Source: Octopus sinensis (Eukaryota). Taken from it: 64,000 bases of DNA. Under the pieces are notes generated by a model. It had not been told where the DNA came from. It saw only the letters and a list, made by a program, of their open reading frames with translations, and made no database searches. The stretch covers positions 5,828,001-5,892,000 of the forward strand of contig NC_043024.1 in the NCBI RefSeq assembly GCF_006345805.1, given 5' to 3'. This document shows positions 1,314 to 63,313 of the stretch, piece after piece. How positions within the stretch are numbered: position 1 is the stretch's first letter; each line of letters starts with the position of its first letter. Both the position numbers and the translations under genes were made by a program.

Positions 1314-1878
1314 TTGGGTTGTCTGGAAAGTTCATGCCGATTTATAGCAGCTTACCTTTCGACTTATTTAAGAACATTGTTGAGTCCATAAAATAGGATT
1401 TGACTACACCTCCATTTAGAGCACAGTTTAAGCTATCTTTCCATGGAAGAAGGTCTATGTTCCTATAACCTGTTTTAATTCTGTAACCCTTTAAAATGGA
1501 AGATAAGAAATTCATTTTCGGCACTTGATGCTTTGGGAACCAGACAAAAATTGCTGCAGCTCGGCTGGGATGGGTTACCCCACCCTTCATATTCACCAGA
1601 TATTGCTCCTTCGGATTTCCACTTATTCAGGTCTCTGCAGAATTGTCTCAATGGTAAAAATTTCAATTCCTTGGATGACGTAAAAAGATACCTTGATGAA
1701 TTCTTTGCCATGAAACCACCTCAATTCTGGGAAGAAGGTATTTTCAAGTTAAAGGAAAGATGGAGACGCATTGTGCAACAAAATGGTTCATATTTGGTTG
1801 ATTAAAAATGTAATGGCAAGTATTTATTGAGCTTTCTGTTTCCTTTAAAAATTGGCACAAACTTTCCAGACAACCCAA
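1314..1878 (+). mobile_element. Internally deleted mariner (DD34D, mellifera-like) with both TIRs
   Basis: About 30-bp TIRs TTGGGTTGTCTGGAAAGTT..., TA flanks. N-terminus MEDKK(I)HFRHLMLWE at 1496 is fused to C-terminal GWDGLPHPSYSPDIAPSDFHLF...GSYLVD*. Confidence 0.92.
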
Positions 1879-4504: not shown

Positions 4505-4885
4505 TATCGCATACCTGGCTATATTGTCGTGGCATCTCTTATATTCCTTCTGGGCTAGTGGCGTACATTGGTTGGTAATATACTATTAAGTTTCACCATT
4601 TTATCCGCAGATTCTGCACTTATCACTTTCTGATGTTGTCTATTCTGTATTTTATGTAGTTTGTTCTTAGTGCTTGATCTTGGGCAGCACAGATTAGAGC
4701 CTTCGTTTCCGGTTTTAAATCACTTTTAGTCATCCACGACCATCTTTTTTCTCTGTCTGTCTTATCTCCAACGTCCTTATGAAATTGTCCCTGCATTCTT
4801 TTTTTTACCCACCTATAATCAGTTTCATTTGTTTTCAATTTCTTGTATAGTGCTTTATCTTTGCACTCTTTCATCCTACACAAGC
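4505..4885 (-). mobile_element. RLE-type non-LTR retrotransposon fragment (R4/Dong-like)
   Basis: WSWMTKSDLKPETKALICAAQDQALRTNY, then after a frameshift DKCRICG*NGET..ITNQCTPLAQKEYKRCHDNIAR (degenerate CCHC knuckle). Confidence 0.75.
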
Positions 4886-5137
4886 CTGACCTTCCTACTT
4901 TCTTTATTGTTGTTGTTGTTGTTAAGCTAGCAAGCTGGCAGGATCGTTAGCATTCCAGGAAAAATGCTCATCAGCATCCTGCCTATCCCCATGTTCTTAG
5001 TTCAAATTTTTGCCCAGGTTGATTTGCCTTTCATTTTCTCAGGGTCAATAAAATCAGCACCAGTTGACCCTGGGGTCAATGTAATCAACTTACCCTCTCC
5101 TCCAAAATTGCTGGCCTTGTACCAAAGTATGAAACCA

Positions 5138-7224: not shown

Positions 7225-8110
7225 AAGCTCCTACCCCTGCTTGCAACTAAGGGCCTCTCTCTCAAAGTGAAAGGTAGACTGCATGATGCATGTGTGTTAC
7301 ACAGCAGTGAAACATGGGCCATGACTGCTGAGGACTTGCATAGGTTTGAAAGAAATTAAGCTGGTATGATCCACTGGATGTGTAATGTCAGTGTGCATAC
7401 ACAAAAGAATGTAAGCACCCTGAGAGAAAAGTTGGACATAAGAAGCGTCAAATGTGGTGTGCAAGAGAGACGACTGCTCTGGTATGGTCATGTGTTACAT
7501 ATGGATGAGGACAGCCGTGTGAGGAAGTTCCACTCCCTAACTGTAGAAGGATCCTGTGGAAGAGGTAGAGCCAGGAAGACATGGGAGGAGATGGTGAAGC
7601 ATGACCTTTTGAACATTGGGCCTTATAGAGGCAATGACAGGAAACCTAGACCTTTGGAGATATACTGTGATCGAGAAGACCTGGCAACTAAAGTGAGATT
7701 GTAGCCATGGCTGATGCCAGTGTTGCATGTCTGGTCCATTTAAAAGTACCCCTGATGCATCGGGTGATATGATATGCTTGGGAAGGCCTGTCGAGTCAAG
7801 TAAAATCAAAATTGCAGCCCTGGCTGGCCAGTGGCCCCTGACTGGCTCCCATTTCAGTGACATGTAAAAAGCACCATCTGAACCTGGCTGATGCTAGTAC
7901 CCACTGACTGGTTCATAAAAAGCACTATCTGAACATGATTGATGCCAGGCCTGCCTGACTGGCTCCCCTGTGCCAGTGGCACATAAAAATCACCCATTAC
8001 ACTTTTGGAGTGGTTGGCGTTAGGAAGGGCATCCAGCTGTAGAAACATTGTCAGATCAGATTGGAGCCTGGTGCAGCATGGAAAACAGATGCTAAACGAT
8101 GATGATGATG
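7225..8110 (+). mobile_element. 5'-truncated RTE-clade LINE (C-terminal ORF remnant plus 3' UTR)
   Basis: LLPLLATKGLSLKVKGRLHDACV...WYGHVLHMDE...GRGRARKTW with internal stops; 3' UTR ends in (GAT)n. Confidence 0.9.
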
Positions 8111-21849: not shown

Positions 21850-22495
21850 CATGCATATGTAGTGTTTTATTGAAGCTGTGAAGACTTCCCTAACTGTTAC
21901 TCTGAGTATCACATCACTGGCCATCAGAGTATCTAGAACAATACAATAATACATAAGTATTATTGTATCACAAAGTTCTAAATATGCACAATTGTCTGAT
22001 GATCAGTTGACATGAAACTCTGAGTAACAGTTTGCAAGAACTTTTCAGCTTCAATGAAACAGTGATCTTTACTCTGCCTTTGGTAATTGAGTACTATTTT
22101 CTCCACATTGTTTTGCACCTATGTGCTTACGTGTGTGTATATATGTACACACATACATATATATATATTTATGTATATGTGTGTGTGTGGATGTGTATCT
22201 ATGTGTGTGTGTGTGTGTGTATGTATGAATATATAATTATGTATATTTCATACTATATAAAATATATATATATGTATGGAAATAAATACTTTCTTTTATC
22301 ATTTTTTCTCTTTTGTATTTTTCTTTCCGACAATATAAATAATTATAACAACATTGATATTGATAATGGGATGAACCATAGAGCGATATTATTTTTTTCT
22401 CTTCTTTTTGTTGTTTTTGGATATTTTTTCTTTGTGATTCTCTCGTGAGAATGATGCAGTGTTGCCTTGTGTGTGCCTCCAGGCCATCCTTGTTC
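21850..22495 (-). other. Probable integrin beta 3' UTR with candidate polyadenylation signal (AATAAA at 21866-21871 on minus)
   Basis: Follows the stop codon; AATAAA is followed by a TG/TA-rich stretch. The true 3' end cannot be fixed from sequence alone. Confidence 0.4.
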
Positions 22496-22564
22496 TTATT
22501 TCTCGCGCCCCCAGACAGGATTCTCAAATGTCGTTGATGCTGGGTGATATATAGGATTGCCTTG
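22496..22564 (-). CDS. ITGB: Integrin beta subunit, terminal coding exon (QGNPIYHPASTTFENPVWGREK*)
   Basis: Acceptor atctatttaattttcag, phase 0. NPIY, then STT, then NPVW at integrin beta tail spacing, followed by TAA. Confidence 0.95.
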   Translation of the reverse strand, partial: QGNPIYHPASTTFENPVWGREK

Positions 22565-26736: not shown

Positions 26737-28035
26737 TTCATCATCATCATCATCATTTAGCGTCCGTTCTCCATGCTAGCATGGGTTGGACGGTTCAACT
26801 GGGGTCTGTGAAGCTGGAAGGCTTCATCAGGCCCAGTCAGATCTGGCAGTGTTTCTACGGCTGGATGCCCTTCCTAACGCCAACCACTCCGTGAGTGTAG
26901 TGGGTGCTTTTTACGTGCCACCTGCACAGGTGCCAGACAGAGCTGGCAAACGGCCACGAACGGATGGTGCTTTTACGTGTCACCGGCACGGGGCCAGGCG
27001 AGGCTGGCAACGGACACGAACGGATGGTGCTTTTACGTGCCACCGACACGGGGGCCAGACAGGGCTGGCAAACGGCCACGAACGGATGGTGCTTTTACGT
27101 GTCACCGGCACGGGGGCCAGGCCAGGCTGGCAACAAACACGAACGGATGGTGCTTTTACGTGCCACCTACACGGGGGCCAGACAGGGCTGGCGAACGGCT
27201 ACGAACGGATGGTACTTTTACGTGTCACCTGCACGGGTGCCCTGATGTTGATCGACCTCAATTTGGTTTGATCTTGATTTTGACTGTTCTCACTGGTCTT
27301 GCCGGGTTTTCTCACGCACAGCATACCTCCAAAGGTCTCGGTCACTGGTCATTTCCTTGGTGAGACCTAAAGTTTGAAGGTCATGCTTCACCACCTCGAC
27401 CCAGGTTTTCCTGGGTCTACCTCTTCCACAGGTCCCCTCAACTGCCAGGGTGTGGCACTTTCGCACACAACTATCTTCAGCCATTCTCATCACATGACCA
27501 TACCAGCGCATACGTCTCTCTTGCACACAACAACTGATGCTTCTTAGGTTCAACTTTTCTCTCAAGGTACTTACACTCTGTCGATTATGAACACTGACGT
27601 TACACATCCATCGGAGCATACTAGCTTCATTTCTTGCGAGCTTACGCAAATCCTCAGCAGTCACAGCCCAAGTTTCACTACCATGTAGCATGGCTGTACG
27701 TACACATGCATCATACAGTCTGCCTTTTACTTTGAGCGAGAGGCCTTTTGTCACCAGCAGAGGTCTCTAAACTTTGCCCAGGCTATTCTTACTCTAGCAG
27801 TTATACTCTCAGCGCACCCGCCCCCGCTACTGACTTGGTCACCTAGGTAACGGAAACTATCAACTACTTCTAGCTTTTCTCCCTGGAAAGTGACGGAAGT
27901 TGGTCTCAGAGCATTTTCAGTGTTAATTGTTCCTGAGCATCTGCCACATACAAAAACCATCTTCCTAGTTAGCCTTCCTTTGATATTGCTGCACCTCTTA
28001 TGTGTCCATAGCTTACACTTGGTGCATCTTATAGA
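26737..28035 (-). mobile_element. 5'-truncated RTE-clade LINE with frameshifted ORF and tandem-repeat 3' UTR
   Basis: CTKCKLWTHKRC..CGRC..FRYLGDQ..AWAKFR and GRLYDACVRTAMLHGSETW..RWYGHVMRM..GRGRPRKTW; (GAT)n tail at 26737. Confidence 0.92.
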
Positions 28036-28934
28036 GTTTTATTTATTATTATTTTGCACATTACTTAATCATCGGTATATTAGTTTTTATCTTATATTTA
28101 ATATTTCTATTATATGTAATTTTCTAGATGGTGCCATTCAATTTTTCATTTTGAATTGATAAAAGGTAGTTTTTTCTAATTTATATATATATATAAACAC
28201 ACACACACACATATAAATGCTGGTACATATAGGTGTGTGTATTTGTCTATGTGTATATGTCAGTCAGTGATTGTGTACATGTGTGTGTAGAGCTTTATAC
28301 TCTGTGTGTGTATTTATATATACACATTTGTATGATGGTGATGCTCATTTACAGCAATTGTGATATTAGGACAACAGTACACAGACACATGTATACACAC
28401 AACAGGCTTCTTTTAGTTTCTGTCTATTGAGTTCACTTATATGGCCTAGGGCTATAATCAAAGACTTTTGTTCAAGGTGCTACACAATGACAATGAACCC
28501 AAAACCACATGGTTGAAAAGCAAGCTTCTTAACAATACAGCCATGCCTAGATGGGATGGTCATGTCAGGAACTCCTTTGATCATAAGTGTATTTGACTAA
28601 TCAGTACTGACATGAGTCTAAACAACAACAAAAAAAAAGTATATTAGAAGTATATAGGTGTAGGAGTGGCTGTGTGGTAAGTAGCTTGCTTACGAATCAC
28701 ATGGTTCCGGGTTCAGTCCCTCTGCGTGGCACCTTGGGCAAGTGCCTTGTGAGTGGATCTGGTAGACTGAAACTGAAAGAAGCCCATTATATATATATGT
28801 ATATGTGTGTATATGTGTGCGTATATGTTTGTGTGTGTGTGTTTGTCCACCCAACATCGTTTGACAACCGATAGAATAAGAGACTGATAGAATAAGTACT
28901 AGACTGAAACAAGTAAAAGTCCCTAATTACTTAC

Positions 28935-29101
28935 TGGATGCCACTGGGCCTTTTTCTGTTCACTTTCAAATCGGGCCATTTCTCTTCTATCGTAATAGGT
29001 CGTGAAACCTTTCCAGATGATCAACACCAGAAGGCCTATGAAGAGAATTCCACCGATAATTCCAACAACTAGCCACGTAATGTTGATCAGTTCGGTACAA
29101 T
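28935..29101 (-). CDS. ITGB: Integrin beta subunit, transmembrane and membrane-proximal cytoplasmic exon (DCTELINITWLVVGIIGGILFIGLLVLIIWKGFTTYYDRREWPDLKSEQKKAQWHP)
   Basis: Acceptor ccatttctgtctttcag and donor CCA|GTAAGT; 167 nt, phase 1 to 0. GxxxG-type TM helix, then IIWK, DRRE and the conserved Trp match the integrin beta consensus IWKLLxxIHDRREFAKFEKExxxAKW. Confidence 0.95.
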
Positions 29102-45789: not shown

Positions 45790-46085
45790 AGGAACATGAC
45801 TCAATGGTTAGAGTGTTGAGATGACGATCGTGAGGTTGTGAGTTTGACTCTCAGACCGGCTGCATGTTGTGTTCTTAAGCAAGACACTTTATTTCATGTT
45901 GCTCCAGTCACTCAGCTGTATCAGCCTTTGCCTTTCCCTTGGATAACATCGGTGGTGTCAAGAGGGCAGGCTGGTATGCATGAGCGACTGCTGGTTTTCT
46001 GTAAACAACCTTGCCTGGACTTGTACCTCAGAGGTTAACTTTCAAGGTGCAATCCCATGGTCATTCATGACCGAAGGGGGTCATC
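45790..46085 (+). mobile_element. tRNA-headed SINE, further family (inverted fragment at 35300-35465)
   Basis: A/B-box-like head followed by AAGCAAGACACTTTATTTCATGTTGCTCCAGTCACTCAGCTGTA core. Confidence 0.6.
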
Positions 46086-58467: not shown

Positions 58468-58882
58468 GGCAGCGAGCTGGCAGAACCGTTAGCACGCTGG
58501 GCGAAATGCGTAGCCGTATTTCATCTGCCGTTACGTTCTGAGTTCAAATTCCGCCGAGGTCAACTTTGCCTTTCATCCTTTCGGTGTCAATAAATTAAGT
58601 ACCAGTTATGCACTGCGGTTGATATAATCATCTTAATCCGTTTGTCTGTCCTTGTTCGTCCCCTCTGTGTCTAGCCCCTTGTGGGTAGTAAAGAAATAGG
58701 TATTTTGTCTGCTGCTGCGTTCTGAGTTCAAATTCCGCCGAAGTCGTCTTTGCCTTTCATCCTTTCGGGGTCGATAAATTAAGTACCAGCTACGCACTGG
58801 GGTCGTGGGAATAGACATAATCCCTTTGTCTGTCCTTGTTTGTCCCCTGTGTTTAGCCCCTTGTGGGCAATAAAGAAATAAG
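58468..58882 (+). mobile_element. Second SINE family (OR-like), partially dimeric copy; over 15 copies or fragments in the window
   Basis: GGCAGCGAGCTGGCAGAA..GAGTTCAAATTCC..GCCTTTCATCCTTTCGGGGTCGATAAA. Also at 5443-5650, 10320-10548, 18450-18790, 22700-22920, 24855-25965 cluster, 45510-45742, 49368-49776. Confidence 0.8.
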
Positions 58883-59894
58883 AAGTTTGTTTCCCAACCA
58901 CATGTTTCTTGGGCAAGTGTCCTTTACTATGGCCTTGGGCCGACAAATACCTTGTGGTAGATGGAAACTGAGAGAAGCCCATAGTATACACATATGTGTC
59001 TGTGTGTGCGTCTTCGTATCTGTGTTTGTCACCCACCACCACTTGACAACTTGTGTGTTTAATATTCCTTTAACTTAGTAGTTCAGCAAAGGAAATTGAT
59101 AAAATAAATATCATGGACAGTTTGACCAGAGCTGGCCAAATTGAGAGCTGTACTAGGTTCCAGTCACACTTAGCTTGATTTATACAGCTAGATGCCCTTC
59201 CTAATACTAACCACTTCACATAGTGTTCTAGTTCTTCATATATATACTCTTTTACTCTTTTACTTGTTTCACTCATTTGACTGCGGCCATGCTGGAGCAC
59301 CACCTTTGAATCAAGCAACTCGACCCCGGGACTTATTCTTTTGTAAGCCCAGTACTTATTCTATCGGTCTCTTTTGCCGAACCGCTAAGTGACGGGGACA
59401 CAAACACACCAGCATCGGTTGTCAAGCAATGCTATGGGGACAAACACAGACACACAAACACACACACGCATATATATATATATATACATATATACGACGG
59501 GCTTCTTTCAGTTTCCGTCTACCAAATCCACTCACAAGGCTTTGGTCGGCCCGAGGCTATAGTAGAAGACACTTGCCCAAGGTACCACGCAGTGGGACTG
59601 AACCCGGAACCATGGGGTTGGTAGACAGGCTACTTACCACACAGCCAATACACACACACACACATACACGTGTGAGTGTGAATGAGATTGACAGAATATA
59701 TACTGGGGTTGGTTCATTGAACTAAAAATATCAAAGTTGTGCTCCAGCATGGCCACAGTGAAACAAGTAATAAGAAAAAAGAAGATATCTATGACGACAC
59801 ACACATATACAGATATATAAATACATGCACGTGTACAAATATACACATGCATACACACAAATGAATATATACCTACTTACATACACACACACAC

Positions 59895-60298: not shown

Positions 60299-60605
60299 TG
60301 GATGCACATGCCCTAGTGGTTAGAGCAGCAGACTCACAGTCGAGGGACTGTGGGTTCGAATCTCAGACCGGGTGATGTGTGTGTTTATGAGCGAAAGATC
60401 TAAGCTCCATGCGGCTCTGGCAGAAGGTAATGGAGAACTTCTGCTGACACTTTCGCCACAACGTTCTCTCACTCTTTCCTCCTGCATCTTGCAGCTCACC
60501 TGTGACGGACCGGCGTCCCGCCCAGGTGGGGAACCTATATGCCAAGGAAACCAGGAAACTGGCCCTAATGAGCCAGGTGTGGCTCGAGAAGGAACAAACA
60601 ACAAC
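60299..60605 (+). mobile_element. tRNA-headed SINE with V-domain-like core
   Basis: A-box CTAGTGG, B-box GGTTCGAATC, core GACGGACCGGCGTCCCGCCCAGG, (CAA)n tail. A related head occurs inverted at 36912-37216. Confidence 0.65.
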
Positions 60606-60718
60606 ATATATATATATAGAAGAAAATGGATACAATAACAATGGGAAGCTCGTGGTTTTCGCTGGTATGTCTTTAATTAATTAGAGAACAAAGAAGGAAG
60701 AATCTGAGATGAAGTTAG

Positions 60719-60767
60719 CATTAACGATCGTTTCAATTTACTGGTTTAAGTAAATCTCTTCAGAATG
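60719..60767 (-). ncRNA. Minimal type-I hammerhead ribozyme motif, sense to the integrin pre-mRNA
   Basis: CATT-CTGAAGA-GATTTACT(TAAACC)AGTAAATT-GAAA-CGATCG-UU-AATG; canonical core, 8-bp helix II, palindromic helix III ACGATCGT. Confidence 0.72.
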
Positions 60768-61291
60768 GGAATACAGGTAGATGCATTGGTTGGGATGCGA
60801 AAATAATTGATACATATGTGATGGTAATGTAAACAAATTGTTAATTCTTACATTAAATTTTGTTCTTGTACTGTTAAATTCACTGGGTAGAGGTTTGCTT
60901 GTCGTAGACTGGTTAGTTTCGTTGGGTAATTAGGGCGGGGTGAGTATTACTTAGGTGCGGGTTTCCTAGTTTAATTAAGCACATTTTTTTCACACATGTG
61001 TATTCAGTTTACGATTATATATATATATATGTATGTATGTATATATATATATATCACTCTTTTCTTTTCACTCTTTTACTTGTTTCAGTCATTTGACTGC
61101 GGCCATGCTGGAGCACCGCCTTTTTAATCGAGCAACTCGACCCCGGGACTTATTCTTTTGTAAGCCCAGTACTTATTCTATCGGTCATTTTTGCCGAACC
61201 GCTAAGTGACGGGGACATAAACGTACCAGCATCGGTTGTCAAGCAATGCTAGGGGGACAAACACAGATGCACACATATATATATACATATA

Positions 61292-61677
61292 CTAGCAGTA
61301 TCGCCCGGCGTTGCTCAGGTTTGTAAGGTAAATAACTATAAAGCATTTTTAGAGAGTTATAGCCAAAAAATAGCAAAAAAACGGAAAAAAAATGATGGTA
61401 AATTTTTTTTTGAGGGTTAAAAAAGGTCGAGTTGCGTCCCCTAGACAGTCTGTGGTTTGTGTTTCTGATTCTCGACCCCATGTCGAATTTATCGATTTTT
61501 TTCAGAACCGGGGGAACTTTTCAAAATTTTCGCTGCGTTAGTTTTGAACTATGACATTGGGCTATGTGTGTGTCAAGTTTCATCAGAATCGGTTGAAAGC
61601 CGTGGTCAGGGTGAGGGTACAAGCAAACAGACACACAGAAACACACACAGACAAACTGCCGTTTATATATAGAGAGA
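61292..61677 (-). mobile_element. Non-autonomous Helitron inserted in a SINE
   Basis: Same TC...hairpin-CTAG termini and 3' end as 1891-2274; splits an otherwise continuous SINE (about 61070-61843). Confidence 0.75.
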
Positions 61678-61840
61678 TACGACGGGCTTCTTTCAGTTTC
61701 TGTCTACCAAATCCACTCACAAGGCTTTGGTCGGCCCGAGGCTATAGTAGAAGACACCTGCCCAAGGTGCCACGCAGTGGGACTGAACCCGGAACCATGT
61801 GGTTGGTAAGCAAGCTACTCACCACACAGCCACTCCTGCG

Positions 61841-61878
<38 letters not shown>

Positions 61879-62714
61879 CAAATTGAGATAGGGGTTGTAA
61901 ATGCAACCTTCCATGGGATAACATATATCCAATATACTGCTAGTAATAAAGTATGTGATTGAGTATTATCGTGTAATTGATATTTGATTTAGATGTATTT
62001 CTCCATTTTCTTATCTTGTACATATATATATATATACATACATCCACACACACAAATACACAAAAAGAAGATGGGGGGGAAAAAGAAGTAACAATGTATC
62101 TGCTACAAACTATAAACTTATCTTTTACCCTTTCACTTCATTCAGCCATAAGTCTATGGCCATGCTGGGGCACCACCTTGAGAAATTTTTAATTGAATGA
62201 ACTGACCTCAGTACTTTTATGTTTTTAACCCTCGGTCACTTTTGCTAAAATGCAAAGTTATGGGGACATGAACGCAGCAACACTGGTTGTCAAGCAGTGG
62301 TGGGGGAGAAACACGGACACAAACACACACACACGCATATATATATATATATATTATATATATATATATATATACACACACATGAGGGGCTTCTTTTAGT
62401 TTCCATCTATCAAACTCACTCACATGGCTTTGATTGACCTGAGGCTAATATAGAAAACACTTGCCAGTCCTCAGTCAAACCATCCAACCCATGCTAGCAT
62501 GGAAAGTGGATGTTAAACAATGATGATGATGATATATATATATATAAACTTACTTGGAAATGGATGTGTGGCGTTCAATCATATAATAATATAAATAAAA
62601 CATATACATATATATGCATATATACATACATTTGTATATGCACATATGGGTACAGGACGTCACAAAACGTAAACAACATGAAATACGAAGACAAACTTGG
62701 GTACGCAAAGAATG

Positions 62715-63117: not shown

Positions 63118-63219
63118 CTTGTTTCTTCTTAACATCAATCCTATCTGTATCGTAATCCGAGATGATTAAATAATGGACGTAACATTCGTCTAACTCCACT
63201 GTACACTTCTTTTTTGTGT
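63118..63219 (-). CDS. ITGB: Integrin beta subunit, internal exon encoding the beta-tail domain (xTKKKCTVELDECYVHYLIISDYDTDRIDVKKKQ); upstream exons lie beyond the window
   Basis: Acceptor tttcttaatttcag and donor AAG|GTGAGT; 102 nt, phase 1-1, open in one frame only. Joins in frame to the TM exon and has the C-x5-C pattern of the beta-tail. Symbol is family-level only. Confidence 0.88.
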
Positions 63220-63313
63220 CTGAAATTAAGAAACATTGATAATTAATCATCATCATAACAATAACAACAGCCAGCATCATCATTTTTGGTTAATGTCCTC
63301 ATTCTATACTGAC

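What the first reader, a model, noticed from the sequence alone, without database searches (positions are those of the whole stretch)
60719..60767. Hammerhead with canonical core in the sense strand of the integrin beta intron
Seen: intact CUGAAGA/GAAA core, 8-bp helix II (closing G-U), 4-bp helix I and palindromic ACGAUCGU helix III, about 2.35 kb downstream of the 63118 donor and in pre-mRNA orientation. Established: minimal PLE hammerheads cleave poorly as monomers but work as dimers; conserved intronic hammerheads exist in amniotes. Inference: it could cut the 34-kb intron co-transcriptionally and influence splicing to the TM exon, or be inert.
Basis: partly seen in the sequence, partly recalled or inferred. 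Interest (0 to 1): 0.7.

Follow-up and report, generated by a model that had tools for sequence, protein, structure and literature searches.

The report
Lone hammerhead-like motif in octopus intron
A 49-base sequence inside a 34-kb intron of an octopus integrin-beta gene fits the hammerhead self-cutting RNA pattern, but it is a single weak copy with no partner and no counterpart in a related octopod, so it is most likely a dead leftover of a Penelope-type jumping gene (or a chance match), not a regulator of the gene.

Summary
On the minus strand, 60767..60719 reads CAUU-CUGAAGA-[8-bp helix II, G·U closing pair, 6-nt loop]-GAA-ACGAUCGU-U-AAUG. This is a complete type-I hammerhead descriptor, in sense orientation, 2.35 kb into the 34,018-nt intron between the last extracellular exon and the TM exon of an Octopus (sinensis/vulgaris) integrin beta-1-like gene.

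The support for a working ribozyme is thin:
- Rfam Hammerhead_1 aligns end to end but scores 11 bits against a threshold of 34.
- Helix I has about zero predicted probability in context, and the CUGA box pairs with a downstream UCUCAGA.
- Folding energy is no better than for shuffled sequence.
- There is no second copy or substrate strand in 64 kb for the dimer that such short-helix-III hammerheads need.
- Two conserved Penelope-like-element hammerhead features are missing: the extra nucleotide after A9 and the G10.1-C11.1 pair.
- No PLE coding remnant lies nearby.
- The orthologous Argonauta hians intron and gene contain no hammerhead.

Scrambled-core decoys on real DNA suggest that a match this complete arises roughly once per genome by chance. 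Octopus genomes carry many PLEs.

Best reading: a solitary PLE-type hammerhead relic, inert or nearly so (about 0.55). A chance match has about 0.3 and a functional intronic ribozyme about 0.05. Interest is low.

The parts
60764..60767 (-). Helix I, 5' arm (CAUU, positions 2.4-2.1)
   Evidence: It pairs with AAUG 60722-60719. It is only 4 bp, the next pair would be C:C, and the predicted pairing probability is 0.00-0.07.
60757..60763 (-). Catalytic box CUGAAGA (C3-A9)
   Evidence: In the local minimum-free-energy fold it pairs instead with UCUCAGA 60709-60703.
60735..60756 (-). Helix II hairpin: GAUUUACU (60756-60749), loop UAAACC (60748-60743), AGUAAAUU (60742-60735). It has 8 bp, one G-C pair, and G10.1·U11.1 as the closing wobble.
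   Evidence: Pair probabilities are 0.66-1.0 in all contexts tested. U11.1-G12 reads TpG in a region with CpG o/e 0.44, so it could be a decayed CpG; this is inference.
60732..60734 (-). Core G12 A13 A14
60724..60731 (-). Helix III segment ACGAUCGU (A15.1...U16.1). It is a perfect palindrome. As a monomer it gives 2 bp plus a GAUC tetraloop; in a dimer it gives an 8-10-bp intermolecular helix.
   Evidence: the duplex alone is -10 kcal/mol, and cofolding gives a 10-bp AACGAUCGUU duplex. ACGATCGT occurs twice in the window against 0.08 expected. The other copy, at 45824, is inside a SINE with no hammerhead core.
60723..60723 (-). U17, with the predicted scissile bond between 60723 and 60722 (GUU triplet)
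   Evidence: position by hammerhead numbering
60719..60722 (-). Helix I, 3' arm (AAUG, positions 1.1-1.4)
60703..60709 (-). Competitor strand UCUCAGA, which pairs with UCUGA-GA of the catalytic box in the predicted fold
   Evidence: 91-nt and 146-nt folds
60625..61012 (.). 388-bp block that carries the motif. It is unique within the window and is bounded by (TA)n tracts at about 60600-60620 and 61016-61054 and by SINE copies.
   Evidence: The open frames have no Pfam hit, there are no translated relatives among 1.84 billion representatives, and only a weak 12/14 inverted repeat is present.
63119..63222 (-). Integrin beta exon (DTKKKCTVELDECYVHYLIISDYDTDRIDVKKKQ), with a GTGAGT donor at 63118
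28935..29100 (-). Integrin beta transmembrane/juxtamembrane exon (...WLVVGIIGGILFIGLLVLIIWKGFTTYYDRREMARFESEQKKAQWHP)
22495..22564 (-). Last coding exon (QGNPIYHPASTTFENPVWGREK*)

Best explanation
The motif is a solitary, minimal type-I hammerhead of the kind carried by Penelope-like retroelements and their non-autonomous derivatives. These have a long helix II, a short helix I and a tiny palindromic helix III that only becomes a real helix when two copies pair. It was probably left in this intron by an old or truncated insertion. It now stands alone, has a G·U where the family keeps G10.1-C11.1, and has no partner copy, so it is expected to cleave the integrin pre-mRNA very poorly or not at all and to have no role in the gene's expression.

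Shown: the motif, its uniqueness in the window, its gene context, its weak model score and weak folding, and its absence in Argonauta. Inferred: the retroelement origin and the lack of activity.
For: [quoted passage not shown] A helix III of 2 bp plus a tetraloop is the typical invertebrate form (PMC7229834).
- All invariant core bases and three perfectly paired helices are present.
- Rfam Hammerhead_1 aligns over its full length in the same register.
- A match this complete is rare by chance: 0 of 719 decoys at full quality and 2 of 719 with helix II >=8.
- Octopus genomes carry abundant PLEs. They form one TE order in O. vulgaris, with an expansion about 56 Myr ago and 30 recently active Penelope families (PMC13282606). 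Penelope is among the abundant ancient coleoid families (PMC8967140).
- About 43% of Xenopus retrozyme copies are intronic, so an intronic copy is ordinary.
- Evidence for inertness: helix I probability is about 0, the core is sequestered by 60709-60703, and z-scores are -0.2 to +0.1. There is no second hammerhead or substrate strand in 64 kb. There is no hammerhead in the Argonauta orthologue.
Against: - No family membership could be shown. There is no other copy of the 388-bp block in the window, in the Argonauta loci, in metagenomes or among translated proteins.
- There is no RT or GIY-YIG remnant nearby.
- Two of the four features that Cervera & de la Pena list as conserved beyond the descriptor are missing: the nucleotide between A9 and 10.1, and the G10.1-C11.1 pair.
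- The Rfam score is far below threshold (11 vs 34 bits).
- Real DNA here has 3.8 times more 8-bp hairpins than a Markov null, so chance remains a live alternative.
- The Octopus genome itself could not be searched.
Confidence: 0.55

Rival explanations
1. Chance match. An AT-rich hairpin and a short palindrome happen to sit between CTGAAGA and GAAA in repeat-rich, hairpin-rich intron DNA. There is no ribozyme ancestry and no function.
For: - Loose hammerhead descriptors hit about 0.011-0.014 times per 64 kb and about 460-560 times per genome. Matches with helix II >=8 bp run to tens per genome (2 of 719 decoys).
- Real sequence is 3.8 times enriched in 8-bp hairpins outside simple repeats, and GAAA is 1.65 times enriched.
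- Rfam gives only 11 bits, with E=5.4 even in a 76-nt search.
- Folding energy is no better than for shuffles.
- G·U at 10.1-11.1 and the missing bulged nucleotide are what chance would give.
- Helix II has only one G-C pair.
- The block is single-copy wherever I could look.
Against: - The full combination of complete core, 8-bp helix II, 4-bp helix I and perfect 8-10-nt palindrome at exactly the helix III position was reached by none of 719 decoys. By my rough analytic extrapolation from the rates it is expected only about 0.05-10 times per genome, depending on how strictly 'as good' is defined.
- The palindrome holds two CpGs in a region with CpG o/e 0.44, and ACGATCGT is expected 0.08 times per window.
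- The shape coincides with the specific PLE variant architecture, which is not part of a generic descriptor.
Confidence: 0.3
2. Functional, lineage-specific intronic ribozyme. The motif self-cleaves the nascent integrin pre-mRNA 2.35 kb into the 34-kb intron, as a monomer helped by cellular factors or by pairing between nascent transcripts. It thereby lowers or gates splicing to the TM exon, in the manner proposed for the domesticated intronic hammerheads of amniotes.
For: - It has sense orientation and an intact core.
- It has perfect helices even though the main octopus PLE expansion is dated about 56 Myr ago, at a Jukes-Cantor distance of about 0.2. This could reflect constraint, or a young copy, or ascertainment.
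- About 31.6 kb must still be transcribed after the motif, so even slow cleavage would have minutes to act (inference).
- There is precedent in the RECK, CTCL and DTNB intronic hammerheads (PMC6155905).
Against: - There is no hammerhead anywhere in the Argonauta hians orthologue, in two assembly copies.
- The motif block has no conserved counterpart, and the introns align only in repeats.
- There is no HH9/HH10 or other Rfam hit.
- Helix I is unstable and the core is sequestered in the predicted folds.
- There is no partner for dimerisation.
- G·U at 10.1-11.1 and a GUU triplet are suboptimal (established hammerhead biochemistry, from my own knowledge).
- There is no recognisable loop 1 for tertiary contacts.
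- Single PLE-type motifs showed no detectable cleavage in vitro (PMC4209133).
Confidence: 0.05

Closest known systems
Minimal hammerheads of Penelope-like elements (min-HHRs and the variants with a small palindromic helix III; Cervera & de la Pena 2014, PMC4209133)
   Same: It has type-I topology, helix II of 8 bp (family 6-8), helix I of 4 bp (family 4-5) with no defined loop 1, a palindromic helix III/15.2-16.2 that implies dimer action, and occurrence as a dispersed single copy. The host phylum and genome are known to carry PLEs.
   Different: It has no unpaired nucleotide between A9 and 10.1, and G10.1·U11.1 instead of G-C. It is not shown to lie in a pLTR or next to an RT-GIY-YIG ORF. No consensus family or covariation was available, and no second copy lies within the 64 kb examined.
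Canonical metazoan type-I hammerhead (Rfam RF00163 Hammerhead_1; Schistosoma, newt and invertebrate retrozyme ribozymes)
   Same: It has the same core and the same register. Its helix III, ACGAUCGU, resembles the model consensus ACGcgCGU. A 2-bp stem plus tetraloop is the invertebrate form (PMC7229834).
   Different: The score is 11 bits against a gathering score of 34. Helix I is 4 bp instead of 6, and helix II is 8 bp instead of 4. There are no conserved loop 1/loop 2 nucleotides, and it is not in a 150-400-bp tandem repeat.
Domesticated intronic hammerheads of amniotes (HH9 in RECK, HH10 in CTCL, DTNB; PMC6155905)
   Same: It is a type-I hammerhead in sense orientation inside a large intron of a protein-coding gene, and is presumably retroelement-derived.
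   Different: Those are defined by deep conservation at the orthologous intron and by robust motifs. This one is absent from the orthologous Argonauta intron and gene, gives no Rfam HH9/HH10 match, and shows no evidence of selection.

Membership tests
Hammerhead ribozyme, type I (generic) | Invariant core C3 U4 G5 A6 N7 G8 A9 / G12 A13 A14 / A15.1-U16.1 / H17 | tested here: met
   CUGAAGA ... GAA A...U U; H17 = U
Hammerhead ribozyme, type I (generic) | Three helices around the core, with helix I open (type I) | tested here: met
   helix I 4 bp, helix II 8 bp, helix III 2 bp plus GAUC loop or an 8-nt palindrome. Helix I is predicted not to form in context.
Hammerhead ribozyme, type I (generic) | G10.1-C11.1 closing pair of helix II | tested here: not met
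   G10.1·U11.1 wobble (60756 / 60735)
Hammerhead ribozyme, type I (generic) | Score at or above the Rfam gathering threshold for a hammerhead family (RF00163, RF00008, RF02275-7) | tested here: not met
   no hit. RF00163 scores 11.0 bits against 34, E = 5.4.
Hammerhead ribozyme, type I (generic) | Loop 1/loop 2 tertiary contacts that give activity at physiological Mg2+ | tested here: inconclusive
   Helix I ends after 4 bp with no definable loop or bulge, and loop 2 UAAACC has no recognised motif. Contacts cannot be judged from sequence alone.
Hammerhead ribozyme, type I (generic) | Site-specific self-cleavage 3' of H17 | not testable with these tools
   Needs an in-vitro transcription and cleavage assay, or RNA end mapping
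PLE minimal hammerhead (Cervera & de la Pena 2014) | Long helix II (6-8 bp) with short helix I (4-5 bp) | tested here: met
   criteria from PMC4209133
PLE minimal hammerhead (Cervera & de la Pena 2014) | Unpaired nucleotide between A9 and 10.1 | tested here: not met
   G 60756 pairs with U 60735. Treating it as a bulge would leave U 60735 unpaired before G12.
PLE minimal hammerhead (Cervera & de la Pena 2014) | Palindromic 15.2-16.2 / loop 3 | tested here: met
   ACGAUCGU is a perfect palindrome
PLE minimal hammerhead (Cervera & de la Pena 2014) | Location in a pLTR flanking an RT-GIY-YIG ORF, or membership of a multi-copy consensus family with covariation | tested here: inconclusive
   There is no RT or GIY-YIG remnant and no other copy in the window, the Argonauta loci, metagenomes or the protein space.
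PLE minimal hammerhead (Cervera & de la Pena 2014) | Second copy in tandem or nearby (the paper's filter is <50 kb) to allow the dimer | tested here: not met
   a single hit in the 64 kb, which covers 3.2 kb upstream and 60.7 kb downstream on the transcript
Non-LTR retrozyme | Tandem repeats of about 150-400 bp, each with a type-I hammerhead | tested here: not met
   no tandem repeat includes the motif, and the block is unique
Domesticated intronic hammerhead (HH9/HH10 type) | Conservation at the orthologous intron across species | tested here: not met
   The Argonauta hians orthologous intron (L001:33634-47020) and the whole gene, in two copies, have no descriptor hit, no Rfam hit and no similarity to 60625-61012.

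The most novel reading that the evidence does not exclude
The motif is an octopus-lineage domesticated ribozyme that cleaves the nascent integrin beta-1-like pre-mRNA early in its 34-kb penultimate intron. By doing so it tunes how much transcript reaches the transmembrane and cytoplasmic exons. This would be an invertebrate counterpart of the amniote intronic hammerheads.
Probability: 0.04. Interest if true: 0.75.

Novelty: new member of a known kind. Interest (0 to 1): 0.2.

Why it matters
If it is what it most likely is, it matters little. Hammerhead motifs derived from Penelope-like elements and retrozymes occur in the thousands in many invertebrate genomes, and many of them sit in introns. 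Its modest value is as a pointer that octopus genomes, for which my two full-text literature searches on the subject found no hammerhead census, probably hold PLE-type hammerheads worth cataloguing. Only if cleavage in vivo and conservation among octopods were shown would it become interesting, as a first invertebrate case of an intronic ribozyme acting on a host mRNA.

Tried and rejected
1. Rfam at gathering threshold on the whole window and on the Argonauta loci gave nothing. At E<=10 on 701 nt it gave no hammerhead. Only a 76-nt search brought up Hammerhead_1, at 11 bits.
2. Exact look-ups of 12 window ORFs around the motif, to reach conspecific or congeneric contigs, found none on record.
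3. The orthologous loci of O. sinensis and O. vulgaris were found, but no DNA was returned because the genes span 163 and 156 kb and contain no nested genes. The look-up of P0001 itself failed.
4. A metagenome scan for the motif with the loop and 11.1 left free gave 0 hits.
5. An exhaustive protein-representative search with the 63-aa open frame over the block found only three unrelated tandem-repeat proteins.
6. Pfam on all open frames of the block gave nothing.
7. No PLE RT or GIY-YIG remnants appear among stop-to-stop ORFs of the window or the Argonauta loci. Only SINE, LINE and mariner debris is present.
8. The idea that the (TA)n tracts on both sides mark a PLE insertion into a microsatellite (PMC8557442) was not pursued further. 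The 61016-61054 tract is equally well explained as the tail of the adjacent SINE, and (TA)n is everywhere in this window.
9. The second ACGATCGT at 45824 was considered as a dimer partner and rejected, because it lies in a tRNA-derived SINE with no core or helix I complement.
10. MITE, Helitron and tRNA readings of the hairpin were rejected. There is only a weak 12/14 inverted repeat and no tRNA.
11. The supplements of the PLE papers, which might hold cephalopod hammerhead consensus sequences, are not held.

Full report
**The observation**

The minus strand of 60767..60719 reads CAUU CUGAAGA GAUUUACU UAAACC AGUAAAUU GAA ACGAUCGU U AAUG. In hammerhead numbering the parts are:
- helix I, 4 bp: 60767-60764 with 60722-60719
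- the C3-A9 box: 60763-60757
- helix II, 8 bp, closed by a G10.1·U11.1 wobble, with a 6-nt loop: 60756-60735
- G12 A13 A14: 60734-60732
- helix III, the perfect palindrome ACGAUCGU: 60731-60724
- U17 at 60723, so the predicted scissile bond is 60723|60722

My own type-I descriptor finds this as the only hit on either strand of the window. That remains true when helices of 3 bp, a bulge after A9 and the U3-A8 core variant are allowed.

**Gene context**

- The exon 63222-63119 (AG acceptor, GTGAGT donor) joins in phase to the exon 29100-28935. That exon encodes the transmembrane helix and the WK...YDRREMARFE juxtamembrane motif.
- The last coding exon is 22564-22495.
- The joined peptide retrieved integrin beta-1-like of Octopus sinensis (99% in the search). 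It is identical over the C-terminal 112 residues to the O. sinensis and O. vulgaris proteins of that cluster. The window is therefore from one of these species or a very close relative.
- The intron is 34,018 nt. The motif lies 2,351 nt from the donor, in sense orientation.

**Is it more than chance?**

- A first-order Markov simulation (80 Mb) gives 0.014 loose matches (helix I >=4, helix II >=4) per window and hundreds per multi-Gb genome.
- Real DNA is less forgiving. This window has 3.8 times more 8-bp hairpins than the Markov model even outside simple repeats, and 1.65 times more GAAA.
- I therefore ran the same descriptor with all 720 composition-matched scrambled cores on 114 kb of real Octopus and Argonauta DNA. 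Of the 719 decoys, 14 hit at the loose level (about 0.011 per window, about 460 per genome). Two reached helix II >=8 bp (tens per genome). None also had a palindromic helix III.
- ACGATCGT itself is expected 0.08 times per window and holds two CpGs in a region with CpG o/e 0.44.

My estimate is that a match this complete arises by chance about once per genome, give or take an order of magnitude. That is improbable for one window but not for a genome-wide scan.

**Does it look like a working ribozyme?**

- Rfam finds no hammerhead at gathering thresholds or at E<=10 in 701 nt.
- Helix II forms with high probability. Helix I has probability 0.07 in isolation and 0.00 in 111-551-nt contexts.
- The hammerhead fold of the 49-mer is worth -0.3 kcal/mol, against -4.5 for helix II alone.
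- In local folds the catalytic box UCUGA-GA pairs with UCUCAGA at 60709-60703.
- Z-scores against shuffles are -0.2, -1.1 and +0.1.
- Two copies would form a 10-bp AACGAUCGUU duplex, as expected for dimer-type hammerheads. There is, however, no second hammerhead, no substrate-like strand and no similar sequence anywhere in the 64 kb. The other ACGATCGT, at 45824, is inside a tRNA-derived SINE without any core.
- From established hammerhead biochemistry (my own knowledge), G·U at 10.1-11.1 and a GUU triplet are tolerated but suboptimal.

**What kind of hammerhead does it resemble?**

Cervera & de la Pena (PMC4209133) describe PLE hammerheads as follows:
- helix II of 7-8 bp and helix I of 4-5 bp with an ill-defined loop 1
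- little or no helix III, or in variants a small palindromic one
- mostly single dispersed copies from truncated elements
- no detectable cleavage as single motifs, and low activity even as dimers

The candidate matches this shape well. Its helix III (2 bp plus tetraloop) is the usual invertebrate form (PMC7229834).

The same paper lists four features that emerged beyond the descriptor and argue against random origin:
- Consensus families with covariation: this could not be tested.
- A nucleotide between A9 and 10.1: absent here.
- A conserved G10.1-C11.1 pair: absent here.
- Palindromic 15.2-16.2: present here.

U11.1-G12 is a TpG in a CpG-depleted region, so a decayed C11.1 is plausible, but that is inference.

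Octopus genomes carry many PLEs (PMC13282606; PMC8967140). In Xenopus about 43% of retrozyme copies lie in introns. A retroelement origin is therefore realistic, and an intronic position is unremarkable.

**Attempts to show family membership or conservation**

- The 388-bp block 60625-61012 that carries the motif is unique in the window. It sits between (TA)n tracts and SINE copies. It has no transposon hallmarks beyond a weak 12/14 inverted repeat. Its open frames have no Pfam-detectable coding remnant.
- No RT or GIY-YIG fragment of PLE type is visible in the window.
- ORFs around the motif are not on record in the public assemblies.
- The O. sinensis and O. vulgaris genes are too long (163 and 156 kb) for their DNA to be returned.
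- A metagenome scan and an exhaustive protein-space search found nothing related.
- The Argonauta hians orthologue was retrieved in two assembly copies, and the orthologous intron is L001:33634-47020. Neither that intron nor the rest of the gene has any hammerhead by the relaxed descriptor or by Rfam.
- Nothing in Argonauta resembles the block. Only 10.7% of the Octopus intron aligns to Argonauta at all, all of it in repeats.

The motif is thus not an anciently conserved intronic element of the amniote HH9/HH10 kind. Conservation within Octopodidae remains untested.

**Verdict**

- Most likely (about 0.55): a solitary PLE-type hammerhead relic that is inert or nearly so in the integrin pre-mRNA.
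- Serious rival (about 0.3): a chance match.
- About 0.05: a functional, lineage-specific intronic ribozyme. It is not excluded, but no positive evidence supports it and several observations count against it.

If real, it is a new member of a known kind, and interest is low. The decisive tests are a copy-number and TE-library search in the Octopus assemblies, an alignment of the orthologous intron among octopods, and a monomer-versus-dimer cleavage assay with end mapping in vivo.

Noticed in passing
window 60703-60709 with 60757-60764 (minus strand): UCUCAGA just downstream of the motif is complementary to UCUGA-GA of the catalytic box. In predicted local folds this 7-bp interrupted helix encloses the whole motif and buries C3-A9.
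   Followed up: partly
window 45824-45831: This is the second copy of the rare palindrome ACGATCGT (0.08 expected per window). It lies in the tRNA-like head of a SINE (TGGTTAGAG...GAGTTTGACTCTC) and not in a hammerhead.
   Followed up: yes
window 59250-59650, 61066-61830, 62123-62465; also 58516-58880: There are several copies of one SINE family within 3.5 kb around the motif, 77-95% identical in the aligned segments. One has an internal insertion of about 370 bp. There is also a 184-bp tandem duplication of another tRNA-derived SINE. The same SINE-derived 'ORFs' recur all over the window.
   Followed up: partly
window 1479-1802 (+); 27293-28038 (-) and 7360-7701 (+); 4626-4946 (-): Transposon coding debris is present: a mariner-type transposase C-terminus (…SPDIAPSDFHLF…), two related LINE reverse-transcriptase C-terminal fragments (…CGRGRPRKTW…) and another LINE-like fragment. 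None is of PLE type.
   Followed up: no
whole window: CpG is strongly depleted (o/e 0.44) with TpG/CpA in excess (1.30). About 11% of the window is simple repeat. 8-bp hairpins are 19 times the Markov expectation overall and 3.8 times outside simple repeats. Structure-descriptor hits in this genome need real-sequence nulls.
   Followed up: yes
L001 (BAAFZT010000043.1:35421139-35471262) and L002 (BAAFZT010000127.1:852867-901826): The Argonauta hians assembly GCA_054771915.1 carries the integrin beta-1-like gene twice with the identical 802-aa product, on a 35.7-Mb contig and a 1.09-Mb contig. The second is probably an uncollapsed haplotig and not a true duplication.
   Followed up: no
window 29101-63118 versus L001:33634-47020: The orthologous intron is 34.0 kb in Octopus and 13.4 kb in Argonauta, and the whole gene is 156-163 kb versus 46 kb. 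Only repeats align between the two introns. I did not test what accounts for the difference in size.
   Followed up: partly
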